From: Mytilus trossulus
Taxonomy: Eukaryota
Assembly: GCF_036588685.1 (NCBI RefSeq)
Contig: NC_086381.1
Location: 3,906,001 to 3,970,000, forward strand
Length of the DNA stretch: 64,000 nucleotides
Reading direction: 5' to 3'
Positions within the stretch are counted from its first letter, which is position 1; every line of letters begins with the position of its first letter. A program made the translations under genes and the position numbers. The notes below the pieces were generated by a model. It searched no databases, was not told where the DNA came from, and saw only the letters and a program-made list of their open reading frames with translations. Of the stretch, positions 71 to 64,000 are shown piece after piece.

Positions 71-1147
71 ACTCACCTAATCCACCATAATTAATACCAG
101 ACGAAGGATCCACATGATCTACAATTAACCCATCAGATGTGAATGTAGTGTGGACTTACCTAATACATTATAAACAATGCATGATGATAGATCCACATGA
201 TCGACAATGAATCTATCAGATGTGAATGTAGTGTGGACTTACCTAATCCATCATAAACAAAGCCAGATGATGGATCCACATGATCCACAATGAATCTATC
301 AGATGTGAATGTAGTGTGGACTTACCTAATCCATCATAAACAAAGCCAGATGATGGATCCACATGATCCACAATGAATCCATCAGATGTGAATGTAGTAT
401 GGACTCACCTAACCCATCATAAACAATAGCAGACGAAGGATCCACATGATCCACAATGAATCCATAAGATGTGAATGTAGTGTGGACTTACCTAATCCAT
501 CATAAACAATGCAAGATGATGGATCCACATGATCCGCAATGAATCCATAGGATGTGGATGAAGTGTGGACTTACCTAATCCATCATAAACAATGCCAGAT
601 GATGGATCCACATGATCCACAATGAATCCATCAGATGTGGATGTAGTGTGGGCTTACCTAATCCATCATAAACAATGCCAGATGATGGATCCACATGATC
701 CACAATGAATCCATCAGATGTGAATGTAGTGTGGACTTACCTAATCCATCATAAACAATGCCAGATGGTGGATCCACATGATCCACAATGAATCCATCAG
801 ATGTGAATGTAGTGTGGACTTACCTAATCCATCATAAACAATGCCAGATGATGGATCCACATGATCCACAATGAATCCATCATATGTGGATGTAGTGTGG
901 ACTTACCTAATCCATCATAAACAATGCTAGATGATAGATCCACATGATCCACAATGAATCCATCAGATGTGGATGTAGTGTGGACTTACCTTTCCATCAT
1001 AAACAATGCCAGATGATAGATCCACATGATCCACAATGAATCCATCATATGTGGATGTAGTGTGGACTTACCTAATCCATCATAAACAATGCCAGATGAT
1101 GGATCCACATGATCCACAATGAATCCATCAGATGTGGATGTAGTGTG
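71..1147 (-). repeat. 83-bp tandem array, 13 copies = 3' end of exon 27 + splice donor
   Basis: Donor motif recurs at 73,156,239...986,1068. Confidence 0.95.
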
Positions 1148-1275
1148 GGCTCCAGCATGGTTATAAGCTATGACATTAGAGTAATATCTAACACCAGGTA
1201 TCAGGCTGATTCTAGACATATTGTATCCTGTGGCTGTCCCTGGTATAGCCTCTGGTATGGTCAGGATATCATAAC
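1072..1275 (-). CDS. Exon 27 (YDILTIPE...VDHVDPSSGIVYDGL), phase 1-1
   Basis: TTTATAG acceptor, G|GTAAGT donor; edge copy of the 83-bp array. Confidence 0.85.
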
Positions 1276-31200: not shown

Positions 31201-34200
31201 GGATTAAATGCCTGACAATCTTTACTTACCGTTAGAATCAGGAGCCCCTACAGCATCTATAACAATGTTAGGATGTATTAGAATTAGATTAAATGCCTGA
31301 CAATCTTTACTTACCGTTAGAATCAGGAGCCCCTACAGCTTCTATAACAATGTTAGGATGTATTAGAATTGGATTAAATGCCTGACAATCTTTACTTACC
31401 GTAAGAATCAGGAGCCCCTACAGCATCTATAACAATGTTAGGATGTATTAGAATTAGATTAAATGCCTGACAATCTTTACTTACCGTTAGAATCAGGAGC
31501 CCCTACAGCTTCTATAACAATGTTAGGATGTATTAGAATTGGATTAAATGCCTAACAATCTTTACTTACCATTAGCACAAGGAGCCCCCATGGCATCTAT
31601 AACAATGTTAGGATGTATCAGAATTTGATTAAATGCCTGACAATCTTTACTTACCGTTAGAATCAGGAGCCCCTACAGCTTCTATAACAATGTTAGGATG
31701 TATTAGAATTGGATTAAATGCCTGACAATCTTTACTTACCGTTAGAATCAGGAGCCCCTACAGCATCTATAACAATGTTAGGATGTATTAGAATTAGATT
31801 AAATGCCTGACAATCTTTACTTACCGTTAGAATCAGGAGCCCCTACAGCATCTATAACAATGTTAGGATGTATTAAAATTGGGTTAAATGCCTGACAATC
31901 TTTACTTACCATTAGAAACAGGTGCCCCTACAGCATCTATAACAATGTAAAGATGTATTTGAATTGGAATAAATGCCTCACAATCTTTACTTATCATTAG
32001 AAACAGGTGCCCCTACAGCATCTATAACAATGTTAGGATGTATTAGAATTGGGTTAAATGCCATACAATCTTTACTTGCCATTAAGACAAGGAGCCCCTA
32101 CAGCATCTATAACAATGTTAGGATGTATTAGAATTGGGTTAAATGCCTGACAATCTTTACTTACCATTAGCACAAGGAGCCCCTACAGCATCTATAACAA
32201 TGTTAGGATGTATTAGAATTGGATTAAATGCCTGACAATCTTTACTTACCGTTAGAATCAGGAGCCCCTACAGCATCTATAACAATGTTAGGATGTATTA
32301 GAATTGGGTTAAATGCCTGACAATCTTTACTTACCATTAGCACAAGGAGCCCCTACAGCATCTATAACAATGTTAGGATGTATTTGAATTGGAATAAATG
32401 CCTCACAATCTTTACTTACCGTTAGAAACAGGTGCCCCTACAGCATCTATAACAATGTTAGGATGTATTTGAATTGGATGTAAAGCCTCTCAATCTTTAC
32501 TTGCCATTAGAATCAGGTGCCCCTACAGCATCTATAACAATGTTAGGATGTATTAGAATTGGGTTAAATGCCTGACAATCTTTACTTACCATTAGCACAA
32601 GGAGCCCCTACAGCATCTATAACAATGTTAGGATGTATTTGAATTGGAATAAATGCCTCACAATCTTTACTTACCGTTAGAAACAGGTGCCCCTACAGCT
32701 TCTATAACAATGTTAGGATGTATTAGAATTGGATTAAATGCCTGACAATCTTTACTTACCGTAAGAATCAGGAGCCCCTACAGCATCTATAACAATGTTA
32801 GGATGTATTAGAATTAGATTAAATGCCTGACAATCTTTACTTACCGTTAGAATCAGGAGCCCCTACAGCATCTATAACAATGTTAGGATGTATTAAAATT
32901 GGGTTAAATGCCTGACAATCTTTACTTACCATTAGAAACAGGTGCCCCTACAGCATCTATAACAATGTTAGGATGTATTTGAATTGGAATAAATGCCTCA
33001 CAATCTTTACTTACCATTAGAAACAGGTGCCCCTACAGCATCTATAACAATGTTAGGATGTATTAGAATTGGGTTAAATGCCATACAATCTTTACTTGCC
33101 ATTAAGACAAGGAGTCCCTACAGCATCTATAACAATGTTAGGATGTATTAGAATTGGGTTAAATGCCTGACAATCTTTACTTACCATTAGCACAAGGAGC
33201 CCCTACAGCATCTATAACAATGTTAGGATGTATTAGAATTGGATTAAATGCCTGACAATCTTTACTTACCGTTAGAATCAGGAGCCCCTACAGCATCTAT
33301 AACAATGTTAGGATGTATTAGAATTGGGTTAAATGCCTGACAATCTTTACTTATCATTAGCACAAGGAGCCCCTACAGCATCTATAACAATGTTAGGATG
33401 TATTTGAATTGGAATAAATGCCTCACAATCTTTAGCTACCGTTAGAAACAGGTGCCCCTACAGCATCTATAACAATGTTAGGATGTATTTGAATTGGATG
33501 TAAAGCCTCACAATCTTTACTTGCCATTAGAATCAGGTGCCCCTACAGCATCTATAACAATGTTAGGATGTATTAGAGTTGGGTTAAATGCCTGACAATC
33601 TTTACTTACCATTAGCACAAGGAGCCCCTACAGCATCTATAACAATGTTAGGATGTATTTGAATTGGAATAAATGCCTCACAATCTTTACTTACCGTTAG
33701 AAACAGGTGCCCCTACAGCATCTATAACAATGTTAGGATGTATTTGAATTGGATGTAAAGCCTCACAATCTTTACTTGCCATTAGAATCAGGTGCCCCTA
33801 CAGCATCTATAACAATGTAAGGATGTATTAGAATTGGGTTAAATGCCTGACAATCTTTACTTACCATTAGAATCAGGAGCCCCTACAGCATCTATAACAA
33901 TGTTCGGATGTATTAAAATTGGGTTAAATGCCTGACAATCTTTACTTATCATTAGAATCAGGTCCCCCTACAGCATCTATAACAATGTTAGAATTATTAG
34001 AATTGGATTTAATGCCTCACATCTTTACTTATCATTAGAATCAAGTGCCCCTACAGCATCTATAACAATGTTAGGATGTATTAAAATTGGGTTAAATGCC
34101 TGACAATCTTTACTTACCATTAGAATCAGGAGCCCCTACAGCATCTATAACAATGTTAGGATGTATTAGAATTGGATGTAATGCCTGACAATCTTTACCT

Positions 34201-37200
34201 ACCATTATAATCTGGAGCCCCTACAGCATCTATATCAATGTTAGGATGTATCAGAATTGGATTAAATGCCTGACAATCTTTACTTACCATAAGAATCAGG
34301 TGGCCCGACGGCATCTATAACAATGTTAGGATGTATTCGAATTGGATTGAATGCCTCACAATCTTTACTTATCATTAGAATCAGGTGCCCCTACAGCATC
34401 TATAACAATATTAGGATGTATTAAAGTTGGGTTAAATGCCTGACAATCTTTACTTACCATTAGAATCAGATACCCCTACAGCATCTATAACAATGTTAGG
34501 ATGTTTTAAAATTGGATTAAATGCCTGACAATCTTTACTTATCATTAGAATCAGGTCCCCCTACAGCATCTATAACAATGTTAGAATTATTAGAATTGGA
34601 TTTAATGCCTCACATCTTTACTTATCATTAGAATCAAGTGCCCCTACAGCATCTATAACAATGTTAGGATGTATTAAAATTGGGTTAAATGCCTGACAAT
34701 CTTTACTTACCATTAGAATCAGGAGCCCCTACAGCATCTATAACAATGTTAGGATGTATTAGAATTGGATGTAATGCCTGACAATCTTTACCTACCATTA
34801 TAATCTGGAGCCCCTACAGCATCTATATCAATGTTAGGATGTATCAGAATTGGATTAAATGCCTGACAATCTTTACTTACCATAAGAATCAGGTGGCCCG
34901 ACGGCATCTATAACAATGTTAGGATGTATTCGAATTGGATTGAATGCCTCACAATCTTTACTTATCATTAGAATCAGGTGCCCCTACAGCATCTATAACA
35001 ATATTAGGATGTATTAAAGTTGGGTTAAATGCCTGACAATCTTTACTTACCATTAGAATCAGATACCCCTACAGCATCTATAACAATGTTAGGATGTTTT
35101 AAAATTGGATTAAATGCCTGACAATCTTTACTTACCATTAGAATCAGGTGCCACTACAGCATCTATAACAATGTTAGGATGTATTAAAATTGGGTTTAAT
35201 GCCTGACAATCTTTGCTTACCATTAGAATCAGGAGCCCCTACGGCATCTATAACAATATTAGGATGTATTAGAATTGGATTAAATGCCTCACAATCTTTA
35301 CTTACCATTAGAATCAGGAGCCCCTACAGCATCTATAACAATATTAGGATATATTTGAATTGGATTAAATGCTTGACAATCTTTAATTTCCGTTGAAACT
35401 GTCGAGTACTGTTTGGCTTTGTTGTAGCCTCTTATAGAAAATCTTTTACATCGGGAGAAATCCATCGTACCATTCAAAACATACTCAAATAAAATCTGAA
35501 ATTATGAAAAAGCAAATAGGATTCCTTTAAGAAAAGATGTTCGTTTAAATATTTCAAAATCTTTTAGTTAACCATGTTTTTCCAGTGGACAGATGAATAT
35601 ATCACTTTTATTAGAAAACTGTATGTGTGGTTGTCTCTCCTAGGGATTGAAAGGTAACATCGGCTGTACATTAGCATTAGAAGTTTATTTTTATGTCCAT
35701 TAATTACTTACAGTTACCTGTAGGTGTCTATTTTTACATGTATTGAGAATCGTTTTTTGACATTTACCCAATTCTTTTTTATCAACAGAGGGCAACCAAT
35801 TATTCAATTGAAAATACAATACCTATGTATAAATCTGACATAATTCACTAAAAACTAAAATTCAATACAAAATGTACCTGATGTCCAATCGCTGTATAAT
35901 TTAATCTGGTCCACACCATGTACGTCTTTCCCTTTACAGAGTTATCTGTGATAACAAACTCATACTTATCAACTGCAGCATATTTTTCTACCAAATCCTC
36001 AATATCTGGGTCATAGAACTGCGCAAAAGACACCATTAGCTGGAAATATTATTGTAAAAAAATGCAGTTAGAATACAAAACGCTTTTGTTGACTTGCTAC
36101 TTTGTGCAATGTGTAAAGTTTGAATGTCTCACTTTTCACAAAACTAAATTCCTGTTTATTAATTACAAAATGAACACTTAACAAGCTCATGTCTATCTAC
36201 AACAGAGAAGAATCGTGATAATATATATCTTTTGAAGTATCCACAGATTGTTGAAGACTCATTTTGAGTACTTTTGTTTATCAATGAGTAACTCTCATCT
36301 GCGTTAATAACGTAATTGAACGCTTGACTCTTTTGACACATTTGGCAAATCCTACTTTTAAATATAACCAGTTTTATTTGCTAACTGAAAATTAAGCGGA
36401 ATAAAATAATTTAAGACAGCAGAGAAGATAATTCTGTTTAATTGGTTATTACTAACCGACTTAAATAAAAGAGTGAGTTATTATTACTGTAAATGTATAA
36501 TGTCTCTAGTCTGGTCAAAGGGTCAGAGTGTCCTACTTAATTAAACGATAAATTGTTGAGATTAGATAACTTGTTTTCACGTGCATAGAAATTTCTTTTA
36601 TGACCAATGCATGACCGGATATCATCTTTCTTATTGGTCAATGGCATTGCGGGTCAGCACGAGTTTACGTGTAAGTGCATTGTGGTCACTTCCTTTTATC
36701 ATCAGCATTGGATGTGTTAACTTGTGATTCTTATCAAACAATTTGTTCAAAATTATATGTGATTTTGCTTTTTATTCTATGGATAATTTTGGACTGGAGT
36801 GATTTCATTTTAGCTATTTCAGGTAAAATCGAACTGTACTTTTATTTTTAAGCTATTCTATGCTTACATTTTGTACAAACGTACAGTTAATTTTTTTTTT
36901 AACCATCCTTTCATTCGGATAAAACTCACTATTTAGATTTTTGCCAAACATGAGCAGTTGGTCAAATTCATTTCTTTGTCAAAGAGATATTGGGTCAATT
37001 TGAGTTTCATGTGGGTGGCGACACTATGCGTTTACGATCAAAATGTAATTATTTATCATTTATCTGATGATTAACCTAATTGTAATTTTACAAGTTACTG
37101 CATCCTGTACAGCATCATAATGTTTGCAGAACGTATATCCGCCTTATTTATTTGTAAGATACATGATTAGTTTAAATTTTACTACAATTAAAAATTGGAT

Positions 37201-52200: not shown

Positions 52201-54264
52201 GGACGGAAGAACGGAAGATACCAAAGGGATAGTCAAACTCATAAATCTAAAACAAACTGACAACGCCATGGCTAAAAATGAAAAAGACAAACAGAAAAAC
52301 AATAGTACACATGACACAACATAGAAAACTAAAGAATAAACAACACGAACCCCTCCAAAAACTAGGGGTGATCTCAGGTGCTCCGGAAGGGTAAGCAGAT
52401 CCTGCTCCACATGTGGCACCCGTCGTGTTGCTTATGTGATTACAAATCCGGTAAATAGTCTAATTCGGTAGGTCACATTCATGAAAGGGAAGGGGATTGT
52501 AGTTACGACGTAAGGAACATATCCGATATCATTTGTGAAATGGTTATTCCATAACGGTCAACCAACTCGTGATGGCGTCCGTAAAATTTACGAAGGGATG
52601 ATTTCAACTTCACCATTTGGAACTCTTGGTTTTAATAGCTTCCATGTAAGCAGCAACCCTCTATCAAGAAAATCATGATAGGAAATGCAAGCACGGGAAT
52701 ATCGTATCAATTGGGAGATATATACCCCGTATGCAGGTGCTGCTGGAATGTTGCTACTTAGAAATGGAAAGTTCACAATTGGAAAGCTGAAATCATCTCT
52801 TTTGTCGTAAAGTTTTGTTTTCAACCTACCCTCATTGTCAATTTCTAGATGTAAGTCAAGATATGAAGCCGACTTAACTGTATCTGTAGTATCCTTTATC
52901 TCTAGTTCGATGGGATAGATTCGTTCCACATAGTCACCAAATTTTGAATTGTTTAGTGAAAGAACATCATCTATATAGCGGAAAGTAGAGTTAAAGGATA
53001 CCAATTGTGAAGTTAGGGATCTAAGGGGAAGTTCATACCTCCATATTATTTAAAATATTCAAATGAAAACAAAGTACTTGGCATGCTTAAATATTGTAAT
53101 AGTAATGTGCTGTCTAAGCTGTCAATTTTTATTCAAAAGGTAGAAAAGATGCTCGTCTAACTTAAAACTGTAATAAACACAGAATTATTTCTAAAGATGT
53201 ATAATTTAAAAATGTATACTGTTTGTATTGTGAACTATGTTGTAATTATTATTGTGTATAATATGCTCCTGTTACGCAGTCTTCTGCGGCTGAGTTTTCT
53301 TTAATAAACTATAAACTATAAGTAAAGAAAATGTACATCAATTTTTGACATAATCACTTATAAAGTATGTTTGATTTGCACATACACAGTTGTCAATATA
53401 TAACAATATTGTATAATACAATAATGTAAGCGACTGCTTAACAAGTAAAATAATTCGCTTGTTATAAAACCATAATACATCCCCCTTTTTCTACATTCGG
53501 AAATGATTGTTATAAGTAAGGACTCGGGACTTGGATTTTGGTATGTTTGTCATTTGTTAACCATTGTTTTGTTAAACCAAAGTAGAATAAAAACTTTGTT
53601 TAACCTTTATAGAACAGAAAAAATGTCCTCGCTAACATAACACACATACTTATGCCTTCTTGGCGCAAAATTCAATGTCTTTTTTTTTTAAACAAAGTCA
53701 ATTATTTCACAATGGTTATTAAACGTCAATTGTCTTGTCCATGTTAATTTTTAATCTAGAACAAATTGTGGTTATCAACTAAGAGGCAGCTGTTGTAGCA
53801 GAAAAGCAGAAAGACAATTATGATCCTTATTTCCAAGTTATAATATGTGCCGTTTCCTTGTTAAGTTGCAGATTCACAGTTGATTTTATTGTTAAATATA
53901 AACAACAACATGAGATGTTTACGTAAACAGAACACATGTTAAATCCAATGTCATTTTTGACAGTAACAAGTCCGGCTTTTTGTACCATGCATGTGTTGAT
54001 CTTTGTTGTTTTTGTATGCATTACAATTTGCATTCGTGTTAGAATTGATAAACTTAGATAGACATTATTTGCTTTGTCGAAACCAATGATAAAGAACATA
54101 CCGACGGCAAACTGATAGTCCAGTGTAAACAATTCCTCACTGTCAGACACAGCTGCACCAGGCCATGTGGTGACCAGATAATCCCCTGACAACTCTACTG
54201 TAAATATACCACTACCTCCAACAATCTCTGGTGGTGTCGTGTCCATGAAACAGGGACCTAAGGT
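1072..54264 (-). CDS. Large multi-exon gene (27 exons in window, ~1567 aa, 5' and 3' incomplete) encoding an uncharacterised protein of tandem fibronectin type-III-like modules
   Basis: 27 exons read manually, all with AG/GT boundaries and mutually compatible phases, summing to 4702 nt with no stop. Recurrent module pattern WxGFxDxxSGI..Y.W.VG..PG..DI ... YY..V.A.N.AG ... SDG..VDxTPP. Domain call is pattern recognition, not a database hit. Confidence 0.9.
1212..1600 (-). repeat. ~128-bp tandem triplication of the exon 27 acceptor and 5' part
   Basis: ctagacatattgtatcctgtggctgtccctg...ggcagatc three times plus a fragment. Confidence 0.85.
2918..2940. repeat. (TA)n microsatellite
   Basis: atatatatat run. 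Confidence 0.9.
3077..3224 (-). CDS. Exon 26 (VTENVQGTTAKDDDY...SSFPG), phase 0-1
   Basis: TGATAG acceptor, G|GTCAGT donor; not in ORF track, translated manually. Confidence 0.85.
4333..4475 (-). CDS. Exon 25 (KDLLINTF...VRGTA), phase 1-0
   Basis: AACAG acceptor, GCT|GTAAGT donor. Confidence 0.85.
5148..5269 (-). CDS. Exon 24 (YEWSVGYADR...FTIGP), phase 2-1
   Basis: TGTAG acceptor, G|GTAAAA donor. Confidence 0.85.
5540..5960 (+). repeat. Interspersed repeat of the hammerhead-bearing family, core degenerate
   Basis: Shares tagccgtatttggcacaacttttt...caactttgtacttg with 23808-23975; core reads CTAGTAA rather than CTGATGA. Confidence 0.65.
6100..6503 (+). repeat. Interspersed repeat ending GTATACTACTGTTGCCTTTATTT
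   Basis: Reverse-strand relatives at ~27955-28150 and ~41620-41720. Confidence 0.65.
6911..7055 (-). CDS. Exon 23 (VFSGTQY...LRATWQ...KPK), phase 1-2
   Basis: TTTTGTAG acceptor, TG|GTAAGT donor. Confidence 0.85.
7790..7964 (-). CDS. Exon 22, Cys-rich (VGLRSHMVHS...CEGHCVCAP...DKSD), phase 0-1
   Basis: TTAAAG acceptor, A|GTAAGT donor; an additional phase-0 exon before it cannot be excluded. Confidence 0.8.
8836..9581 (-). repeat. 123-124-bp tandem array, 6 copies = 3' part of exon 21 + donor GTGAGT
   Basis: tcacc donor motif at 8864, 8988, 9112, 9236, 9359, 9482. Confidence 0.95.
9486..9670 (-). CDS. Exon 21 (TFAMSTDH...AKDLTK), phase 1-0
   Basis: CCATTAG acceptor, AAG|GTGAGT donor; edge copy of the 124-bp array. 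Confidence 0.85.
9810..10433. mobile_element. MITE with 17-bp TIRs and TTAA-like target site (Kolobok/piggyBac-type)
   Basis: GGGCATACAATACAGTT ... AACTGTATCATATGCCC (2 mismatches), flanked by TTCA and TTAA. Confidence 0.75.
11274..15217 (-). repeat. 58-bp tandem array, ~68 copies = 3' end of exon 20 + donor GTTTGT
   Basis: Unit aaacctctagatggtggtgtactgtctacaaacatccccttggaggtagaagtaatac. Confidence 0.97.
15163..15316 (-). CDS. Exon 20 (VNGIARSY...VDSTPPSR), phase 0-1
   Basis: TTCCAG acceptor, G|GTTTGT donor; edge copy of the 58-bp array. Confidence 0.85.
15557..17357 (+). mobile_element. Non-autonomous Helentron-associated element (HINE/DINE-1-like) with internal ~480-500-bp tandem repeats
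   Basis: 5' TTAGCTCACCT...GTGAGCT, (GTCC/GTC)n microsatellite, ~3 internal repeats, 3' palindrome AGGCTCTTAAGAGCCT-CTAGTT; inserted at a T-run. Confidence 0.8.
18316..18545 (-). CDS. Exon 19 (LWSESSSNGFIVDNTPP...SSQS), phase 1-0
   Basis: TTTTAG acceptor, TCA|GTAAGT donor. Confidence 0.9.
19642..19862 (-). CDS. Exon 18 (IYISAKWYGFDDPQSG...AYNKA), phase 2-1
   Basis: TTCACAG acceptor, G|GTATGT donor. Confidence 0.9.
20352..20538 (-). CDS. Exon 17 (FTLRNIHLGTG...IDNSPP...YQSM), phase 1-2
   Basis: TTTCAG acceptor, AC|GTATGT donor. Confidence 0.9.
21926..22202 (-). CDS. Exon 16 (AFNKAGLSS...VDTTPP...VGITY), phase 0-1
   Basis: TTTAG acceptor, G|GTATGT donor. Confidence 0.9.
22588..22771 (-). CDS. 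Exon 15 (WKGVFLDLESGI...YYINVR), phase 2-0
   Basis: TTCCAG acceptor, AGG|GTTAGT donor. Confidence 0.85.
22915..23070. repeat. Degenerate ~30-bp tandem repeat
   Basis: tatttgaacaactaaacatatttggctg-like units. Confidence 0.6.
23454..23589 (-). CDS. Exon 14 (VDFANRET...IDNTPP...EISP), phase 1-2
   Basis: TTTTAG acceptor, TG|GTGAGT donor. Confidence 0.85.
23900..23941 (+). ncRNA. Minimal type-I hammerhead ribozyme motif (Penelope-type)
   Basis: CGTCA-CTGATGA-GTC..GAC-GAAA-CGCGGGTC-TGGA. Confidence 0.65.
24706..25540. mobile_element. Putative non-autonomous element with 150-nt terminal hairpin and 13-bp inverted repeats
   Basis: Palindrome 24706-24856; CTTTATCCTGCAA (24855) / TTGCAGGATAAAG (25528-25540). 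Confidence 0.55.
25997..26038 (+). ncRNA. Minimal type-I hammerhead ribozyme motif, stem II mismatched
   Basis: TGTCA-CTGATGA-GTC..GTC-GAAA-CGCGCGTC-TGGCG. Confidence 0.6.
26172..26288 (-). CDS. Exon 13 (TISGGNDV...YYATLK), phase 1-1
   Basis: TTTCAG acceptor, G|GTATCT donor. Confidence 0.8.
26944..27049 (-). CDS. Exon 12 (TTVTDLYINWDGFHD...LLGI), phase 0-1
   Basis: TTACAG acceptor, G|GTAAGT donor. Confidence 0.85.
27478..27695 (-). CDS. Exon 11 (KEFINVKF...VDLTPP...QIYQ), phase 1-0
   Basis: TTTAG acceptor, CAG|GTAGGA donor. Confidence 0.85.
28193..28432 (-). CDS. Exon 10 (DIGKPVVLKQNALW...KCGHT), phase 1-1
   Basis: TTTCAG acceptor, G|GTATAT donor. Confidence 0.85.
28456..35385 (-). repeat. 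85-bp tandem array, ~81 copies = 3' end of exon 9 + donor GTAAGT
   Basis: 85-bp periodicity; unit translates DCQAFNPILIHPNIVIDAVGAPDSN then GTAAGT. Confidence 0.97.
35306..35495 (-). CDS. Exon 9 (ILFEYVLNG...DAVGAPDSN), phase 0-1
   Basis: TTTCAG acceptor, G|GTAAGT donor; edge copy of the 85-bp array. Confidence 0.85.
35878..36039 (-). CDS. Exon 8 (LMVSFAQFYDPD...AIGHQ), phase 0-0
   Basis: TTCCAG acceptor, CAG|GTACAT donor. Confidence 0.85.
36366..41586. mobile_element. Non-coding element with split direct repeats A1...B1-A2-B2 (Ngaro/VIPER-like layout)
   Basis: A1 36366-36754 matches A2 40855-41243; B1 40577-40855 matches B2 41308-41586. Confidence 0.6.
37760..38160. repeat. Degenerate tandem repeat (~70-120-bp units)
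   Basis: cagaggtcgtagtagcttggtctatga and tatgcttcgtcatgaaactcatg each recur about 4 times. Confidence 0.75.
42686..42921 (-). CDS. Exon 7 (QWSIFRDF...GGAEK), phase 1-0
   Basis: TTTCAG acceptor, AAA|GTAAGT donor. Confidence 0.85.
44109..44250 (-). CDS. Exon 6 (DHRLSCSDDVDIQ...RSGVG), phase 0-1
   Basis: TTTAG acceptor, A|GTAAGC donor. Confidence 0.85.
44477..45127. repeat. ~56-67-bp minisatellite, ~11 copies, not exon-derived
   Basis: ggaactcctatatagtgatagttgttttataccgcttgtcgaattcactcgttgtt repeated. Confidence 0.9.
45613..45638 (-). CDS. Exon 5, 26-nt micro-exon (DKSLEHHME), phase 1-0
   Basis: TCTTTTTCAG acceptor, GAG|GTTAGT donor; bridges phase-1 exon 4 to phase-0 exon 6. Confidence 0.65.
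46186..46321 (-). CDS. Exon 4 (KYYFTVTALNTVG...GEPCYMI), phase 0-1
   Basis: TTTTAG acceptor, G|GTAAGT donor; manual translation. Confidence 0.85.
46727..46924 (-). CDS. Exon 3 (DIQDLDFQTSTT...LTPYQ), phase 0-0
   Basis: TTTTAG acceptor, CAG|GTAATA donor. Confidence 0.85.
47575..49500 (-). mobile_element. 5'-truncated Penelope-like retroelement: RT ORF (48219-49436) plus ~640-bp 3' region
   Basis: RT motifs SFDFSTLYT, QIIGIPMGTNCAPLIADLFL, RYLDD and thumb DKRDDFSFPIVNYPF...YGVYISQL; upstream KLHK/PYKYRFI remnant; decayed copy of the 3' region at ~41730-42350. Confidence 0.85.
50426..50682 (-). CDS. Exon 2 (HSAYGTDVQGF...VVLDIDTQ), phase 1-0
   Basis: TACAG acceptor, CAG|GTACAC donor; within ORF 50402..50698. 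Confidence 0.85.
51480..53180 (+). pseudogene. Decayed non-LTR (LINE) ORF2 C-terminal fragment, split by the 52195-53004 element
   Basis: Frame-broken remnants LKLFDALVVPILTYSSEIWG, MVYGEL, QDQFIQKW, PIETGRWRKVPRNERICPLC; resumes near 53005. Confidence 0.65.
52195..53004 (-). mobile_element. Second Penelope-like RT family, 3' fragment (YIDD) with 3' region
   Basis: RYIDDVL...LYDKRDDFSFPIVNFPFLSSNIP. Its 3' region recurs on + at ~15391-15556/17358-17610, 19070-19415, 26345-26560, 43700-43995 and 50715-50990. Confidence 0.85.
54102..54264 (-). CDS. Exon 1 in window (TLGPCFMDTTPPEIVGG...DYQFAV), phase 0-1
   Basis: TTTCTATTTCAG acceptor, G|GTATGT donor; edge copy of the 151-bp array. Confidence 0.85.
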
Positions 54265-57200
54265 CTGAAATAGAAAGAAACAACTCTTCACTGTCAGACA
54301 CAGCTGCACCAGGCCATGTGGTGACCAGATACTCTCCTGACAACTATAATGTAAATATACCACTACCGCCAACAATCTCTGGTGGTGTCGTGTCCATGAA
54401 ACAGGGACATAAGGTCTGAAATAGAAAGAAACAACTCTTCACTGTCAGACACAGCTGCACCAGGCCATGTGGTGACCAGATAATCCCCTGACAACTCTAC
54501 TGTAAATATACCACTACCTCCAACAATCTCTGGTGGTGTCGTGTCCATGAAACAGGGACCTAAGGTCTGAAATAGAAAGAAACAATTCTTCACTGTCATA
54601 CACAGCTGTACCAGGCCATGTGGTGACCAGATACTCCCCTGACAACTCTACTGTAAATATACCACTACCTCCAACAATCTCTGGTGGTGTCGTGTCCATG
54701 AAACAGGGACCTAAGGTCTGAAATAGAAAGAAACAATTCTTCACTGTCAGACACAGCTGCACCAGGCCATGTGGTGACCAGATAATCTCCTGACAACTTT
54801 ACTGTAAATATACCACTACCTCCAACAATCTCTGGTGGTGTCGTGTCCATGAAACAGGGACCTAAGGTCTGAAATAGAAAGAAACAATTCCTCACTGTCA
54901 GACACAGCTGCACCAGGCCATGTGGTGACCAGATACTCTCCTGACAACTCTACTGTAAATATACCACTACCTCCAACAATCTCTGGTGGTGTCGTGTCCA
55001 TGAAACAGGGACCTAAGGTCTGAAATAGAAAGAAACAATTCCTCACTGTCAGACACAGCTCCACCAGGCCATGTGGTGACCAGATAATCCCCTGACATTT
55101 GTACTGTAAATATACCACTACCTCCAACAATCTCTGGTGGTGTCGTGTCCATGAAACACGGACCTAAGGTCTAAAATAGAAAGAAACAATTCTTCACTGT
55201 CAGACACAGCTCCACCAGGCCATGTGGTGACCAGATACTCTCCTGACAACTCTACTGTAAATATACCACTACCTCCAACAATCTCTGGTGGTGTCGTGTC
55301 CATGAAACAGGGACCTAAGGTCTGAAATAGAAAGAAACAATTCTTCACTGTCAGACACAGCTGTACCAGGCCATGTGGTGATCAGATAATCCCCTGACAA
55401 CTCTACTGTAAATATACCACTACCTCCAACAATCTCTGGTGGTGTCGTGTCCATGAAACAGGGACCTAAGGTCTGAAATAGAAAGAAACAATTCCTCACT
55501 GTCAGACACAGCTCCACCAGGCCATGTGGTGACCAGATAATCCCCTGACATTTGTACTGTAAATATACCACTACCTCCAACAATCTCTGGTGGTGTCGTG
55601 TCCATGAAACAGGGACCTAAGGTCTGAAATAGAAAGAAACAACTCTTCACTGTCAGACACAGCTATAAACTTCAAGATTATAAAAAACCGGTTTTTTTCT
55701 AAAGTGAACATTGATTGGTTAAATATTTCTCAGTGTGTTTGAATTTGTTTGATAGCCTTTTGGTCATTACTGTTTGTCTCTAATATTTAATTAACTGTGC
55801 ATTTGTATTCAGATATCGCAGATCAAATTTATTCGTTCTTTGTGTAATCATACGTTTTTTGATTGAGTTAAGTCTGCTAATTGATATTTTATCGTATGTT
55901 TTTATATGTTGTGATATTATGCTATTGTTTCAGAAAAAGGGAGAAGGTTTGGGCCCATTAAAACGTTTAATCCCGCTGCAAATGTTTGCACCTGTCCTAA
56001 GTCAGGAATCTGATGTACAGTAGTTGTCGTTTGTTTATGTAATATATACGTGTTTCTCGTTTCTCGTTTTGTTTATATAGATTAGACCGTTGGTTTTCCC
56101 GTTTGAATGGTTTTACACTAGTAATTTTGGGGCCCTTTATAGCTTGTTGTTCGGTGTGAGCCAAGGCTCCGTGTTGAAGGCCGTACTTTAACCTATAATG
56201 GTTTAATTTTTAAATTGTTATTTGGATGGAGAGTTGTCTCATTGGCACTCACACCACATCTTCCTATATCTACAGCTGCACCAGGCCATGTGGTGACCAG
56301 ATAATCCCCTGACAACTCTACTGTAAATATACCACTACCTTCAACAATCTCTGGGGGTGTGGTGTCCATGAAACAGGGACCTAAGGTCTGAAATAGAAAG
56401 AAACAATTCTTCACTGTCAGACACAGCTGCACCAGGCCATGTGGTGACCAGATAATCCCCTGACAACTCTACTGTAAATATACCACTACCTCCAACAATC
56501 TCTGGGGGTGTCGTGCCCATGAAACAGGGACCTAAGGTCTGAAATAGAAAGAAACAATTCTTCACTGTCAGACACAGCTGCACCAGGCCATGTGGTGACC
56601 AGATAATCCCCTGACAACTCTACTGTAAATATACCACTACCTCCAACAATCTCTGGTGGTGTCGTGTCCATGAAACAGGGACCTAAGGTCTGAAATAGAA
56701 AGAAACAACTCTTCACTGTCAGACACAGCTCCACCAGGCCATGTGGTGACCAGATACTCCCCTGACAACTCTACTGTAAATATACCACTACCTCCAACTA
56801 TCTCTGGTGGTGTCGTGTCCATGAAACAGGGACCTAAGGTCTGAAATAGAAAGAAACAATTCTTCACTGTCAGACACAGCTGTACCAGGCCATGTGGTGA
56901 TCAGATAATCCCCTGACAACTCTACTGTAAATATACCACTACCTCCAACAATCTCTGGTGGTGTCGTGTCCATGAAACAGGGACCTAAGGTCTGAAATAG
57001 AAAGAAACAATTCTTCACTGTCAGACACAGCTGTACCAGGCCATGTGGTGACCAGATACTCTCCTGACAACTCTACTATAAATATACCACTGCCTCCAAC
57101 TATCTCTGGTGGTGTCGTGTCCATGAAACACGGACCTAAGGTCTGAAATAGTAAGAAACAATTCTTCACTGTCAGACACAGCTGTACCAGGCCATGTGGT

Positions 57201-60200
57201 GACCAGATACTCTCCTGACAACTCTACTATAAATATACCACTGCCTCCAACTATCTCTGGTGGTGTGGTGTCCATGAAACAGGGACCTAAGGTCTAAAAT
57301 AGAAAGAAACAATTCTTCACTGTCAGACACAGCTGTACCAGGCCATGTGGTGACCAGATACTCCCCTGACAACTGTACTGTAAATATACCACTACCTCCA
57401 ACAATCTCTGGTGGTGTCGTGTCCATGAAACAGGGACCTAAGGTCTAAAATAGAAAGAAACAATTCTTCACTGTCAGACACAGCTGTACCAGGCCATGTG
57501 GTGACTAGATACTCCCCTGACAACTCTACTGTAAATATACCACTACCTCCAACAATCTCTGGTGGTGTCGTGTCCATGAAACAGGGACCTAAGGTCTAAA
57601 ATAGAAAGAAACAACTCTTCACTGTCAGACACAGCTATACCAGGCCATGTGGTGACCAGATACTCCCCTGACAACTCTACTATAAATATACCACTACCTC
57701 CAACAATCTCTGGGGGTGTAGTGTCCATGAAACAGGGACCTAAGGTCTAAAATAGAAAGAAACAACTCTTCACTGTCAGACACAGCTCCACCAGGCCATG
57801 TGGTGACCAGATACTCTCCTGACAACTCTACTGCAAATATACCACTACCTCCAACAATCTCTGGGGGTGTAGTGTCCATGAAACAGGGACCTAAGGTCTG
57901 AAATAGAAAGAAACAATTCTTCACTGTCAGACACAGCTGTACCAGGCCATGTGGTGACCAGATACTCCCCTGACAACTTTACTGTAAATATACCACTACC
58001 TCCAACTATCTCTGATGGTGTAGTGTCCATGAAACAGGGACCTAAGGTCTGAAATAGAAAGAAACAATTCCTCACTGTCAGACACAGCTCCACCAGGCCA
58101 TGTGGTGACTAGATACTCCCCTGACAACTCTACTATAAATATACCACTACCTCCAACAATCTCTGGTGGTGTCGTGTCCATGAAACAGGGACCTAAGGTC
58201 TGAAATAGAAAGAAACAATTCTTCACTGTCAGACACAGCTGTACCAGGCCATGTGGTGACCAGATACTCCCCTGACAACTCTACTGTAAATATACCACTA
58301 CCTCCAACAATCTCTGGTGGTGTCGTGTCCATGAAACAGGGACCTAAGGTCTGAAATAGAAAGAAACAATTCTTCACTGTCAGACACAGCTCCACCAGGC
58401 CATGTGGTGACCAGATACTCTCCTGACAACTCTACTATAAATATACCACTGCCTCCAACTATCTCTGGTGGTGTCGTGTCCATGAAACACGGACCTAAGG
58501 TCTGAAATAGTAAGAAACAATTCTTCACTGTCAGACACAGCTGTACCAGGCCATGTGGTGACCAGATACTCTCCTGACAACTCTACTATAAATATACCAC
58601 TGCCTCCAACTATCTCTGGTGGTGTGGTGTCCATGAAACAGGGACCTAAGGTCTAAAATAGAAAGAAACAATTCTTCACTGTCAGACACAGCTGTACCAG
58701 GCCATGTGGTGACCAGATACTCCCCTGACAACTGTACTGTAAATATACCACTACCTCCAACAATCTCTGGTGGTGTCGTGTCCATGAAACAGGGACCTAA
58801 GGTCTAAAATAGAAAGAAACAATTCTTCACTGTCAGACACAGCTGTACCAGGCCATGTGGTGACTAGATACTCCCCTGACAACTCTACTGTAAATATACC
58901 ACTACCTCCAACAATCTCTGGTGGTGTCGTGTCCATGAAACAGGGACCTAAGGTCTAAAATAGAAAGAAACAACTCTTCACTGTCAGACACAGCTATACC
59001 AGGCCATGTGGTGACCAGATACTCCCCTGACAACTCTACTATAAATATACCACTACCTCCAACAATCTCTGGGGGTGTAGTGTCCATGAAACAGGGACCT
59101 AAGGTCTAAAATAGAAAGAAACAACTCTTCACTGTCAGACACAGCTCCACCAGGCCATGTGGTGACCAGATACTCTCCTGACAACTCTACTGCAAATATA
59201 CCACTACCTCCAACAATCTCTGGGGGTGTAGTGTCCATGAAACAGGGACCTAAGGTCTGAAATAGAAAGAAACAATTCTTCACTGTCAGACACAGCTGTA
59301 CCAGGCCATGTGGTGACCAGATACTCCCCTGACAACTTTACTGTAAATATACCACTACCTCCAACTATCTCTGATGGTGTAGTGTCCATGAAACAGGGAC
59401 CTAAGGTCTGAAATAGAAAGAAACAATTCCTCACTGTCAGACACAGCTCCACCAGGCCATGTGGTGACTAGATACTCCCCTGACAACTCTACTATAAATA
59501 TACCACTACCTCCAACAATCTCTGGTGGTGTCGTGTCCATGAAACAGGGACCTAAGGTCTGAAATAGAAAGAAACAATTCTTCACTGTCAGACACAGCTG
59601 TACCAGGCCATGTGGTGACCAGATACTCCCCTGACAACTCTACTGTAAATATACCACTACCTCCAACAATCTCTGGTGGTGTCGTGTCCATGAAACAGGG
59701 ACCTAAGGTCTGAAATAGAAAGAAACAATTCTTCACTGTCAGACACAGCTCCACCAGGCCATGTGGTGACCAGATACTCTCCTGACAACTCTACTGTAAA
59801 TATACCACTACCTCCAACAATCTCTGGTGGTGTCGTGTCCATGAAACACGGACCTAAGGTCTAAAATAGAAAGAAACAATTCTTCACTGTCAGACACAGC
59901 TGTACCAGGCCATGTGGTGACCAGATAATCTCCTGACAACTGTACTGTAAATATACCACTACCTCCAACAATCTCTGGTGGTGTCGTGTCCATGAAACAG
60001 GGACCTAAGGTCTAAAATAGAAAGAAACAACTCTTCACTGTCAGACACAGCTGTACCAGGCCATGTGGTGACTAGATAATCTCCTGACAACTCTACTGTA
60101 AATATACCACTACCGCCAACAATCTCTGGTGGTGTCGTGTCCATGAAACAGGGACCTAAGGTCTGAAATAGAAAGAAACAATTCTTCACTGTCAGACACA

Positions 60201-63200
60201 GCTGTACCAGGCCATGTGGTGACTAGATACTCTCCTGACAACTCTACTGTAAATATACCACTTCCTCCAACAATCTCTGGTGGTGTCTTGTCCATGAAAC
60301 AGGGACCTAAGGTCTGAAATAGAAAGAAACAATTCCTCACTGTCAGACACAGCTGTACCAGGCCATGTGGTGACCAGATAATCCCCTGACAACTCTACTG
60401 TAAATATACCACTACCTCCAACAATCTCTGGTGGTGTCGTGTCCATGAAACAGGGACCTAAGGTCTGAAATAGAAAGAAACAATTCCTCACTGTCAGACA
60501 CAGCTGTACCAGGCCATGTGGTGACCAGATACTCCCCTGACAACTCTACAGTAAATATACCACTACCTCCAACAATCTCTGGGGGTGTAGTGTCCATGAA
60601 ACAGGGACCTAAGGTCTGAAATAGAAAGAAACAATTCTTCACTGTCAGACACAGCTGTACCAGGCCATGTGGTGACCAGATAATCCCCTGACAACTCTAC
60701 TGTAAATATACCACTTCCTCCAACAATCTCTGGTGGTGTCGTGTCCATGAAACACGGACCTAAGGTCTGAAATAGAAAGAAACAATTCTTCACTGTCAGA
60801 CACAGCTGTACCAGGCCATGTGGTGACCAGATACTCCCCTGACAACTGTACTGTAAATATACCACTACCTCCAACAATCTCTGGTGGTGTCGTGTCCATG
60901 AAACAGGGACCTAAGGTCTGAAATAGAAAGAAACAATTGTTCACTGTCAGACACAGCTGTACCAGGCCATGTGGTGACCAGATACTCCCCTGACAACTCT
61001 ACTGTAAATATACCACTACCTCCAACAATATCTGGTGGTGTCGTGTCCATGAAACAGGGACCTAAGGTCTGAAATAGAAAGAAACAATTCTTCACTGTCA
61101 GACACAGCTGTACCAGGCCATGTGGTGACTAGATACTCCCCTGACAACTCTACTGTAAATATACCACTACCTCCAACAATCTCTGGTGGTGTCGTGTCCA
61201 TGAAACAGGGACCTAAGGTCTGAAATAGAAAGAAACAATTCTTCACTGTCAGACACAGCTCCACCAGGCCATGTGGTGACCAGATACTCCCCTGACAACT
61301 CTACTGTAAATATACTACTACCTCCAACAATCTCTGGGGGTGTGGTGTCCATGAAACAGGGACCTAAGGTCTGAAATAGAAAGAAACAATTCTTCACTGT
61401 CAGACACAGCTGTACCAGGCCATGTGGTGACCAGATACTCCCCTGACAACTCTACTGTAAATATACTACTACCTCCAACAATCTCTGGGGGTGTGGTGTC
61501 CATGAAACAGGGACCTAAGGTCTGAAATAGAAAGAAACAATTCTTCACTGTCAGACACAGCTGTACCAGGCCATGTGGTGACTAGATACTCCCCTGACAA
61601 CTCTACTGTAAATATACCACTACCTCCAACAATCTCTGGTGGTGTAGTGTCCATGAAACAGGGACCTAAGGTCTAAAATAGAAAGAAACAATTCTTCACT
61701 GTCAGACACAGCTCCACCAGGCCATGTGGTGACCAGATACTCTCCTGACAACTCTACTGTAAATATACCACTACCTCCAACTATCTCTGGTGGTGTAGTG
61801 TCCATGAAACACGGACCTAAGGTCTAAAATAGAAAGAAACAATTCTTCACTGTCAGACACAGCTCCACCAGGCCATGTGGTGACCAGATAATCTCCTGAC
61901 AACTCTACTGTAAATATACCACTACCTCCAACAATCTCTGGTGGTGTCGTGTCCATGAAATAGGGACCTAAGGTCTGAAATAGAAAGAAACAACTCTTCA
62001 CTGTCAGACACAGCTGTACCAGGCCATGAAGTGACCAGATACTCCCCTGACAACTTTACTGTAAATATACCACTTCCTCCAACAATCTCTGGTGGTGTGG
62101 TGTCCATGAAACAGGGACCTAAGGTCTGAAATAGAAAGAAACAATTCTTCACTGTCAGACACAGCTGTACCAGGCCATGTGGTGACCAGATAATCCCCTG
62201 ACAACTCTACTGTAAATATACCACTTCCTCCAACAATCTCTGGTGGTGTGGTGTCCAAGAAACAGGGACCTAAGGTCTGAAATAGAAAGAAACAATTCTT
62301 CACTGTCAGACACAGCTGTACCAGGCCATGTGGTGACCAGATACTCCCCTGACAACTCTACTATAAATATACCACTTCCTCCAACAATCTCTGGTGGTGT
62401 CGTGTCCATGAAACAGGGACCTAAGGTCTGAAATAGTAAGAAACAATTCTTCACTGTCATACACAGCTGCACCAGGCCATGTGGTGACTAGATAATCCCC
62501 TGACAACTCTACTGTAAATATACCACTACCTCCAACAATCTCTGGTGGTGTCGTGTCCATGAAACAGGGACCTAAGGTCTGAAATAGAAAGAAACAATTC
62601 TTCACTGTCAGACACAGCTCCACCAGGCCATGTGGTGACCAGATACTCTCCTGACAACTCTACTGTAAATATACCACTACCTCCAACAATCTCTGGTGGT
62701 GTAGTGTCCATGAAACAGGGACCTAAGGTCTGAAATAGAAAGAAACAATTCTTCACTGTCAGACACAGCTGTACCAGGCCATGTGGTGACCAGATAATCT
62801 CCTGACAACTGTACTGTAAATATACCACTACCTCCAACAATCTCTGGTGGTGTCGTGTCCATGAAACAGGGACCTAAGGTCTAAAATAGAAAGAAACAAT
62901 TCTTCACTGTCAGACACAGCTCCACCAGGCCATGTGGTGACCAGATACTCTCCTGACAACTCTACTGTAAATATACCACTACCTCCAACTATCTCTGGTG
63001 GTGTCGTGTCCATGAAACAGGGACCTAAGGTCTGAAATAGAAAGAAACAACTCTTCACTGTCAGACACAGCTGTACCAGGCCATGAAGTGACCAGATACT
63101 CCCCTGACAACTTTACTGTAAATATACCACTTCCTCCAACAATCTCTGGTGGTGTGGTGTCCAAGAAACAGGGACCTAAGGTCTGAAATAGTAAGAAACA

Positions 63201-64000
63201 ATTCTTCACTGTCATACACAGCTGCACCAGGCCATGTGGTGACTAGATAATCCCCTGACAACTCTACTGTAAATATACCACTACCTCCAACAATCTCTGG
63301 TGGTGTGGTGTCCATGAAACAGGGACCTAAGGTCTGAAATAGAAAGAAACAATTCTTCACTGTCAGACACAGCTGTACCAGGCCATGTGGTGACCAGATA
63401 ATCTCCTGACAACTGTACTGTAAATATACCACTACCTCCAACAATCTCTGGTGGTGTCGTGTCCATGAAACAGGGACCTAAGGTCTAAAATAGAAAGAAA
63501 CAACTCTTCACTGTCAGACACAGCTGTACCAGGCCATGTGGTGACTAGATAATCTCCTGACAACTCTACTGTAAATATACCACTACCGCCAACAATCTCT
63601 GGTGGTGTCGTGTCCATGAAACAGGGACCTAAGGTCTGAAATAGAAAGAAACAATTCTTCACTGTCAGACACAGCTGTACCAGGCCATGTGGTGACTAGA
63701 TACTCTCCTGACAACTCTACTGTAAATATACCACTTCCTCCAACAATCTCTGGTGGTGTCTTGTCCATGAAACAGGGACCTAAGGTCTGAAATAGAAAGA
63801 AACAATTCCTCACTGTCAGACACAGCTGTACCAGGCCATGTGGTGACCAGATAATCCCCTGACAACTCTACTGTAAATATACCACTACCTCCAACAATCT
63901 CTGGTGGTGTCGTGTCCATGAAACAGGGACCTAAGGTCTGAAATAGAAAGAAACAATTCCTCACTGTCAGACACAGCTGTACCAGGCCATGTGGTGACCA
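54129..64000 (-). repeat. 151-bp tandem array, ~61 copies in window (runs off the end) = acceptor + 5' 140 nt of exon 1
   Basis: 151-bp periodicity in sequence and ORF track; interrupted at 55665-56271. Confidence 0.97.
55665..56271 (+). mobile_element. 607-bp non-autonomous insertion with 6-bp TSD ACAGCT inside the 151-bp array
   Basis: ACAGCT at 55659-55664 and 56272-56277; same family at 1601-1897 (+) and ~20810-21300, 24378-24585, 45330-45515 (-). Confidence 0.85.

What the first reader, a model, noticed from the sequence alone, without database searches (positions are those of the whole stretch)
54129..64000. Intronic 151-bp exon copies vary mainly at third codon positions: codon-level constraint in a satellite
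Seen: recurrent variants in the exon frame include ACG/ACC/ACT (Thr), CCA/CCC, ATT/ATA, GGT/GGC/GGA, GGG/GGA, CTG/CTA, GAA/GAG at two codons, CCC/CCG and GAT/GAG. Amino-acid changes concentrate on a few sites (A/G/T/I, E/K/Q, T/I/A). I saw no indels, and the AG acceptor is kept (TTTCAG or TTTTAG). Neutral satellite drift should not respect codon position. Three inferences are possible. (a) Copies are repeatedly seeded from the selected exon, so they archive past alleles. (b) Copies get swapped into the expressed edge position by unequal crossover or gene conversion, analogous to pseudogene-cassette diversification such as avian Ig or Borrelia vls. (c) Some copies are translated.
Basis: partly seen in the sequence, partly recalled or inferred. 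Interest (0 to 1): 0.9.

Follow-up and report, generated by a model that had tools for sequence, protein, structure and literature searches.

The report
Intronic exon-copy array with codon-biased variation
About 79 silent copies of the first 138 bases of an exon sit in the intron in front of it, and the differences that have become common among them are mostly synonymous, most likely because the copies keep exchanging sequence with the one expressed copy, which is under selection.

Summary
On the minus strand, 79 silent 151-bp units (13 bp of intron tail with the AG, plus 138 bp of exon) lie head to tail upstream of the one complete exon (window 54102-54264). There are no indels. The array runs 2.8 kb past the window end.

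After collapsing shared variants there are 43 distinct exon-frame variants: codon positions 1/2/3 = 14/7/22. Synonymous changes number 18 against 10.2 expected under a 12-type mutation-spectrum null (P about 0.005; dN/dS about 0.43). The bias sits in variants present in 5 or more copies (10 of 16 synonymous, P = 0.0004). Rare variants, including the single stop, look neutral.

The bias replicates in six other splice-junction arrays of the same gene (P = 0.00035) and, weakly and on few variants, in arrays of symplekin and TRAPPC1. Other first-reader notes report it elsewhere in this genome.

Units are strongly mosaic, and the expressed exon has no private state.

Best reading: unequal crossover and gene conversion link the array to the expressed copy, so purifying selection on that copy filters which variants become common. 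An adaptive cassette system is not needed, and translation of the units is structurally unlikely. No RNA run covered the gene, so expression could not be tested.

The parts
54102..54264 (-). The one complete, presumably expressed exon (163 nt, peptide TLGPCFMDTTPPEIVGGSGIFTVELSGDYLVTTWPGAAVSDSEELFTLDYQFAVG). Its acceptor AG is at 54265-54266 and its donor GTATGT starts at 54101.
   Evidence: Sequence and translation. Ten paralogous exons elsewhere in the genome have the same boundaries.
54265..64000 (-). Window part of the array: 60 of the 79 silent 151-bp units. Each unit is about 13 bp of intron tail with the AG plus the first 138 bp of the exon. The other 19 units continue to G000:C9:3972820 (locus L011:1-2820).
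   Evidence: TRF, exact 151-bp spacing, and the upstream end read.
55665..56271 (.). Repeat-element insertion of about 613 bp that splits one array unit. It is flanked by a duplicated ACAGCT.
   Evidence: Sequence and a 764-bp spacing in place of 151.
11274..15217 (-). Replicate array of the same gene: 58-bp units (52 nt of exon end plus GTTTGT), 67 silent copies. Variants fall at codon positions 2/4/12.
   Evidence: synonymous 9 against 4.4 expected (P = 0.015); third position P = 0.003.
28456..35385 (-). Older replicate array: 85-bp units (79 nt of exon end plus GTAAGT), about 80 copies, 90% alike, with indels. It shows no codon bias (21/27/21).
71..1148 (-). 83-bp donor array (77 nt of exon end plus GTAAGT), 13 copies. 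The trend is in the same direction but is not significant.
8843..9582 (-). 124-bp donor array (97 nt of exon end plus 27 nt of intron), 6 copies. The trend is in the same direction but is not significant.

Best explanation
The array is an intronic minisatellite that arose by tandem duplication of the 3' splice site plus the first 138 nt of an exon. The gene encodes a large mollusc protein built of Ig-like / HYR-like repeats. Only the last copy is a complete exon, because only it keeps the final 25 nt and the donor.

The silent units are not evolutionarily independent of that copy. Unequal crossover and short-tract gene conversion shuffle segments among all units, the expressed one included. 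Exon alleles are therefore copied into the array, and array segments are from time to time moved into the expressed position.

Purifying selection acts only on the expressed copy, but it filters what can become common. New mutations in a unit are neutral at first, which explains why rare variants are random and include stops. A variant that rises in copy number is either imported from an already selected exon allele or exposed more and more often in the expressed position. Common variants therefore end up synonymous or at tolerant residues.

Shown here: the codon bias, its dependence on copy number, the mosaicism, and the replication in other arrays. Inferred: the exchange with the expressed copy, its direction, and that selection acts through it.
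For: 1. Codon bias. There are 18 synonymous variants against 10.2 expected (P = 0.005), and variants in 5 or more copies are 10 of 16 synonymous against 3.5 expected (P = 0.0004). Variants in fewer than 5 copies are neutral-like, 8 against 6.6.

2. Nonsense variants occur at the neutral rate (5 against 6.2 expected over seven arrays) but only in 1-2 copies.

3. Tolerated residues. Common nonsynonymous variants lie on codons poorly conserved among 10 paralogous exons (mean conservation 0.23 against 0.60 for all codons). Also, 8 of 25 nonsynonymous variants recreate a paralog residue against 4.1 expected (P = 0.037).

4. Exchange between units. 96 of 105 pairs of common sites show all four gametes, and at least 12 exchange events are needed within 151 bp. 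There are 56 unit types among 79 units, with block duplications.

5. The expressed exon lies inside the array's variation. It has no private state, and units one base away from it sit at ranks 12, 37, 60 and 72 from the edge.

6. Replication. The six other junction arrays of this gene give 51 synonymous against 33.7 expected (P = 0.00035). In the symplekin 93-bp array the only two common exon-derived variants are synonymous. Its 18 intron-derived bases carry five common variants. In the TRAPPC1 array the exon-derived part has singletons only.

7. Pooled over ten arrays in three genes, common variants per site are 0.109 for intron-derived bases and 0.066 / 0.066 / 0.157 for codon positions 1 / 2 / 3.

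8. The oldest array (85 bp, 90% alike) has lost the bias, as expected once local mutations dominate.

9. One exon copy from another sample (P0001) carries Q at the E/K/Q codon, which is an array variant.
Against: - There are no population data. Exchange with the expressed copy is inferred from a single assembly.
- Similarity to the expressed exon shows no significant gradient along the array (rho 0.15, P = 0.18).
- The unit next to the exon is the most decayed, with 8 differences and the only stop. Edge exchange is therefore not frequent on a short time scale.
- The contrast between positions 1+2 and the intron-derived bases for common variants is only P = 0.10 when pooled.
- The copy-number cut-off (5 or more) was chosen after seeing the data.
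- Indirect selection of this kind needs a large effective population size or a high exchange rate. Neither was measured.
Confidence: 0.6

Rival explanations
1. Adaptive cassette system. The array is kept as a germline reservoir of pre-tested exon variants that diversifies the expressed exon of an extracellular Ig-like protein, in the manner of avian Ig pseudogenes or Borrelia vls.
For: The layout fits: many silent partial copies lie upstream of one expression site. The units encode 30 distinct peptides. Amino-acid variation is concentrated on three or four codons that also vary among paralogs. The units are mosaics.
Against: Common variation is mostly synonymous (dN/dS about 0.43), which is the opposite of a diversifying cassette set. 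Arrays of the conserved housekeeping genes symplekin and TRAPPC1, where diversification makes no sense, are compatible with the same filter, though on few variants. The same architecture is noted in many genes of this genome. There is no evidence of any kind on expressed alleles.
Confidence: 0.1
2. Some units are themselves spliced into mRNA and translated, either as alternative exons or through alternative acceptor use, so selection acts on them directly.
For: Every unit keeps a good acceptor (TTTCAG or TTTTAG), and a CTGAC branch-point-like motif lies about 30 nt upstream of it. Only 1 of 79 units has an in-frame stop. A weak internal GTGAAG would give a 124-nt exon in the same phase as the 163-nt exon; this is my own reading of the sequence.
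Against: The units lack the last 25 nt of the exon and its donor. The period of 151 is not a multiple of three, and the other two frames contain stops, so read-through ends within one unit. Nonsense variants are not depleted, and rare variants look neutral. A 613-bp element sits inside the array. Three RNA runs showed no reads on the units, although they showed none on the real exon either.
Confidence: 0.05
3. Chance or a mutational artefact: the third-position excess reflects base composition, sequence context or post-hoc selection of the pattern.
For: The sample is small (43 variants). The test for the 151-bp array alone gives P of about 0.005.
Against: The null that conditions on each of the 12 change types still rejects. 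No CpG pattern explains the third-position changes. The 85-bp array from the same gene, with the same codon usage, shows no bias, which argues against a context effect. Independent arrays replicate the bias.
Confidence: 0.07
4. One-way archive only. Units bud off the expressed exon over time and simply fossilise its past, selected states, with no return flow.
For: It predicts the same synonymous bias. The ten units nearest the exon differ from it by 3.9 sites against about 5.5 further away.
Against: There is no significant age gradient. Units nearly identical to the exon lie deep in the array. Heavy mosaicism shows that exchange is not confined to the edge. An unequal crossover at the edge produces both reciprocal products, so a strictly one-way flow is hard to obtain; this last point is inference.
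Confidence: 0.15

Closest known systems
[quoted passage not shown]
   Same: It is a tandem array whose edge unit is part of the real exon. The authentic splice site is therefore accompanied by identical silent pseudo-sites, and only the copy joined to the exon body is used.
   Different: F7 has a few donor copies. Here there are 79 acceptor-bearing copies of 151 bp, and at least eight such arrays lie in one gene. No codon-level constraint on the F7 repeats is described in the abstract I read (I read only the abstract and section list). Which site is used here is inferred, not shown.
Pseudogene-cassette gene conversion systems such as chicken Ig pseudo-V arrays, Borrelia vls and Neisseria pilS (from my own knowledge; chicken system also in PMC6008532, listed)
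   Same: Silent partial copies without their own expression signals lie beside one expression site. Copies stay open and vary at tolerated positions, and segmental exchange creates mosaics.
   Different: Those systems act somatically or clonally, use dedicated machinery, and carry mainly amino-acid-changing diversity. Here the common variation is mainly synonymous, any exchange would be germline, and housekeeping genes carry arrays of the same architecture.
Concerted evolution of tandem repeats and gene/pseudogene pairs by unequal crossover and gene conversion (general population-genetic theory, from my own knowledge)
   Same: Non-functional copies that exchange sequence with a selected copy show apparent purifying selection. 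Array edges diverge more than array centres.
   Different: Here the copies are fragments of one exon inside that exon's own intron. The signal is seen as a dependence on copy number within a single array.
Mutually exclusive tandem exon clusters such as Dscam (from my own knowledge)
   Same: They are tandem duplicates of one exon, each with its own acceptor and an open frame.
   Different: These units have no donor, are separated by only 13 bp rather than an intron, and are truncated. Read-through shifts the frame.

Membership tests
Exon-intron junction minisatellite (F7 IVS7 type) | Tandem units, with the edge unit continuous with the real exon so that it spans the splice junction | tested here: met
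   The last unit continues into the 25 unique exon bases and the GTATGT donor. The first unit joins unrelated intron sequence.
Exon-intron junction minisatellite (F7 IVS7 type) | Pseudo splice sites identical or nearly identical to the authentic one | tested here: met
   All 79 units carry TTTCAG (63) or TTTTAG (16).
Exon-intron junction minisatellite (F7 IVS7 type) | Only the authentic site is used in mRNA | tested here: inconclusive
   Three RNA runs gave zero depth on the exon and on the units.
Cassette-type gene-conversion diversification (Ig pseudo-V, vls) | Silent donor copies beside a single expression site | tested here: met
   There are 79 truncated copies upstream of one complete exon.
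Cassette-type gene-conversion diversification (Ig pseudo-V, vls) | Donor diversity is mainly amino-acid-changing and concentrated in variable regions | tested here: not met
   dN/dS is about 0.43, and 10 of 16 common variants are synonymous. The few amino-acid changes are, however, clustered on 3-4 codons.
Cassette-type gene-conversion diversification (Ig pseudo-V, vls) | Expressed alleles are mosaics of donor segments | not testable with these tools
   No population or RNA data could be reached.
Mutually exclusive alternative exon cluster | Each copy is a complete exon with both splice sites, separated by introns | tested here: not met
   The units lack the last 25 nt and the donor, and only 13 bp separate the exon parts.
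Mutually exclusive alternative exon cluster | Copies are seen spliced in mRNA one at a time | tested here: inconclusive
   There was no RNA coverage of the gene.
Neutrally drifting satellite | Variants fall without regard to codon position (dN/dS about 1) | tested here: not met
   The null is rejected for all variants (P = 0.005) and for common ones (P = 0.0004). It is met only by variants in fewer than 5 copies.

The most novel reading that the evidence does not exclude
Splice-junction arrays are a genome-wide class in this bivalve. Their units pass through the expressed position often enough for protein-level selection to shape intronic DNA. In this Ig-like surface-type gene, the 79-unit array would serve as a germline store from which new alleles of the expressed exon are repeatedly drawn.
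Probability: 0.12. Interest if true: 0.85.

Novelty: new variant of a known kind. Interest (0 to 1): 0.6.

Why it matters
If it holds, a protein-coding constraint can be read in DNA that is never translated. The only requirement is that this DNA recombines with an expressed copy.

That matters in three ways:
- It gives a way to measure exchange rates between minisatellite units and an adjacent exon.
- It warns against reading a low dN/dS as proof of translation.
- It points to an unusual property of this genome: minisatellites seeded at exon-intron junctions in many genes. I found only a single-gene precedent in the literature searched (human F7).

Tried and rejected
RNA test. The PacBio run and the two Illumina RNA runs covered only repeat elements (about 50876-53323). 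They gave nothing on the exon at 54102-54264, on the ORF-bearing stretch 50402-50698, or on the units. Expression, acceptor choice and expressed alleles therefore stay untested.

Other individuals:
- A protein search with an array reading frame gave a single Logan fragment, P0001.
- Its cluster carries no name or accession.
- Two exact-pattern scans of metagenome contigs found nothing.

Gene identity. Pfam found nothing on seven exon peptides. The ESM Atlas and a full HMMER search place them among mollusc hypothetical proteins and Ig-like / HYR-type repeats.

Rejected ideas:
- Conversion from paralogs. Single sites match the chromosome-14 paralogs, but neighbouring differences are not carried along.
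- CpG decay. The changes at the one ACG codon are G>C and G>T.
- A 'conveyor' of units ordered by age. There is no significant gradient.
- An assembly artefact. An independent DNA run shows summed contig depth of 335-625 on the unit against about 7-20 on single-copy flanks. Summed contig depth is not a copy number.


Full report
WHAT IS THERE

Tandem Repeats Finder reports a 151-bp period from 54127 to the window end, 95-96% alike and without indels. Read on the minus strand, each unit is CTTTCTATTTCAG followed by 138 nt. Those 138 nt are open in one frame only (TLGPCFMDTTPPEIVGGSGIFTVELSGEYLVTTWPGTAVSDSEELF); the other two frames contain stops.

The unit nearest the low-coordinate end continues for 25 more bases (ACACTGGACTATCAGTTTGCCGTCG) into a GTATGT donor. 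That makes 54102-54264 the only complete exon.

The window is G000:C9:3906001-3970000 in a 1.3-Gb assembly. The array continues for 19 more units to C9:3972820, where it joins ordinary intron sequence. In all there are 79 silent units plus the expressed copy, all at exact 151-bp spacing. One unit is split by a 613-bp repeat element.

About twenty paralogous exons elsewhere in the genome have the same acceptor and donor positions. They share the motif GPCF.DTTPP...LSG.YL...W....F.DSEE.F..DY.FA.G, so the frame and the exon boundaries are secure.

Pfam does not recognise the exon peptides. The ESM Atlas and a full HMMER search place them among mollusc hypothetical proteins and Ig-like / HYR-type repeats.

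CHECK OF THE OBSERVATION

After collapsing shared variants, the 78 uninterrupted silent units carry 43 distinct variants in the exon frame. Codon positions 1/2/3 take 14/7/22.

The null keeps each observed change type (all 12) and places it at random on matching bases of the exon. Against it:
- Synonymous changes are 18 against 10.2 expected (P = 0.005).
- Third-position changes are 22 against 13.8 expected (P = 0.007).
- dN/dS is about 0.43.

The signal depends on copy number:
- Variants in 5 or more units: 16 in total, of which 11 are at third positions and 10 are synonymous against 3.5 expected (P = 0.0004).
- Variants in fewer than 5 units: 8 synonymous against 6.6 expected.

The single stop is a singleton, in the unit next to the exon.

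The six common amino-acid variants fall on four codons (T/I, E/K/Q, E/D, A/T/G). These codons are poorly conserved among ten paralogous exons (mean 0.23 against 0.60 for all codons). Rare amino-acid variants hit conserved residues at random (mean 0.58). Eight of 25 nonsynonymous variants recreate a residue seen in a paralog, against 4.1 expected (P = 0.037).

REPLICATION

The same gene carries at least seven more arrays that straddle a splice junction:
- In the window: 83, 128, 124, 58 and 85 bp.
- 20-30 kb upstream: 59 and 46 bp.

Results for the individual arrays:
- The 58-bp donor array gives positions 2/4/12 (P = 0.003) and 9 synonymous against 4.4 expected (P = 0.015).
- The 46-bp acceptor array gives 2/3/6.
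- The 83- and 124-bp arrays lean the same way.
- The 85-bp array, which is the most diverged (90% alike) and has indels, shows nothing (21/27/21).

The six arrays analysed other than the 151-bp one (the 128-bp array was not analysed) together give 51 synonymous against 33.7 expected (P = 0.00035). All seven analysed together give 69 against 43.9 (P < 5e-5; dN/dS about 0.52). Nonsense variants are not depleted (5 against 6.2 expected), but all occur in only 1-2 copies.

Earlier notes of this scan say such arrays are common in this genome, so I fetched two of the named genes.
- Symplekin, 93-bp donor array (50 units). The 75 exon-derived bases carry five singletons, all nonsynonymous and one of them a stop. 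They carry only two common variants, both synonymous third-position changes. The 18 intron-derived bases of the same unit carry five common variants.
- TRAPPC1, 57-bp array (about 118 units). The exon-derived part has three singletons only. The intron-derived part has six variants, one of them in 48 copies.

These two genes are compatible with the pattern, but the numbers are small.

Pooled over ten arrays in three genes, common variants per site are 0.109 for intron-derived bases and 0.066, 0.066 and 0.157 for codon positions 1, 2 and 3. Rare variants are nearly flat at 0.273, 0.227, 0.217 and 0.288. The contrast between positions 1+2 and intron-derived bases is only P = 0.10 on its own.

HOW IT MOST LIKELY WORKS

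Exchange between units is pervasive:
- There are 56 unit types among 79 units, with blocks of 8-10 units duplicated inside the array.
- 96 of 105 pairs of common sites show all four allele combinations.
- At least 12 exchange events are needed within 151 bp.

The expressed exon sits inside this cloud. None of its states in the shared 138 nt is private, and units one base away from it lie at ranks 12, 37, 60 and 72 from the edge.

An unequal crossover between the expressed copy and an internal unit gives two reciprocal products. One deposits exon sequence in the array. The other places array sequence in the expressed position. Purifying selection on the expressed copy then acts as a filter on what can become common. 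Imported variants are already selected, and a local variant is exposed more often the more copies carry it. Both routes predict what is seen: neutral singletons, synonymous or tolerated common variants, intron-derived bases behaving like third positions, and loss of the signal in the oldest array.

I cannot separate the two directions of exchange with one assembly. The direction, and the link to selection, are inference.

One exon copy from another sample (P0001) has Q at the E/K/Q codon, which is an array variant, along with other differences. This is one data point of unknown origin.

WHAT SPEAKS AGAINST THE OTHER READINGS

Translation of the units is unlikely. They lack the exon's last 25 nt and its donor. 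The period is not a multiple of three, so read-through runs into a stop in the next unit. Nonsense variants arise freely.

An adaptive cassette system is not needed. Common variation is conservative, and conserved housekeeping genes carry arrays of the same architecture whose few variants are compatible with the same filter.

A mutational artefact is unlikely, given the 12-type null and the unbiased 85-bp array of the same gene.

LIMITS

Three RNA runs held only repeat elements of the stretch and gave zero depth on the gene. Acceptor choice and expressed alleles are therefore untested. An independent DNA run shows summed contig depth of 335-625 on the unit against about 7-20 on flanks. That argues against an assembly artefact, but it is not a copy number.

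COMPARISON WITH WHAT IS KNOWN

The architecture has a published precedent in the human F7 intron 7 VNTR, whose first 37-bp element spans the exon-intron boundary and creates silent pseudo-donors (PMC1557585). Apparent constraint on silent copies through gene conversion is standard theory, and cassette systems are a looser analogy.

In four literature searches I found no report of a codon-position imprint on intronic exon-fragment arrays. I also found no report of a genome in which such arrays are frequent. I therefore rate it a new variant of a known kind.

Noticed in passing
window 71-1148, 1211-1600, 8843-9582, 11274-15217, 28456-35385, 54127-64000; L012:1-1703 and 2010-6391: At least eight tandem arrays of this one gene each straddle a splice junction (exon end plus donor, or acceptor plus exon start). 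In the window, 6 of about 10 high-scoring arrays do so. By my rough estimate that is far more than random placement would give. Earlier notes say the same of many genes in this genome.
   Followed up: partly
window 71-1148 (83 bp), 11274-15217 (58 bp), 28456-35385 (85 bp): In three donor arrays the intron-derived part of the unit is exactly the six bases GTAAGT or GTTTGT. I saw no clear microhomology at the junctions. In the other donor arrays that part is 18-37 nt. I have no explanation.
   Followed up: partly
all arrays of this gene; L025/L024 (TRAPPC1); L029 (symplekin): None of the eight periods in this gene (151, 58, 85, 83, 124, 128, 46, 59) is a multiple of three. The symplekin 93-bp and TRAPPC1 57-bp units are in frame and open, so use of a later donor there would insert whole repeats into the protein.
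   Followed up: no
window 54277-54427: The silent unit directly next to the expressed exon is the most decayed one. It has 8 differences from the exon, several of them unique to this unit, and the only in-frame stop (TAG).
   Followed up: yes
window 55665-56271: A repeat element of about 613 bp is inserted in one array unit, flanked by a duplicated ACAGCT. Related sequence occurs at 43779-44030 and 52096-52419.
   Followed up: no
window 52172-53035: This repeat element (with a reverse-transcriptase-like reading frame at 52588-53004) is present at high summed depth in all three RNA runs and the DNA run. It is the reason those RNA runs were listed as holders of the stretch.
   Followed up: no
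each unit, about 30 nt upstream of the AG (for example window 54290-54296): The exon-derived sequence TCTGACA supplies a consensus-like branch point in front of every acceptor except the most upstream one. All copies, including the authentic one, therefore look equally competent for splicing.
   Followed up: no
L011:6895-8166: There is a 20-bp array (TTTAACGCGTTAAAGTTGCA, about 64 copies) in the intron upstream of the 151-bp array. It appears unrelated to any exon.
   Followed up: no
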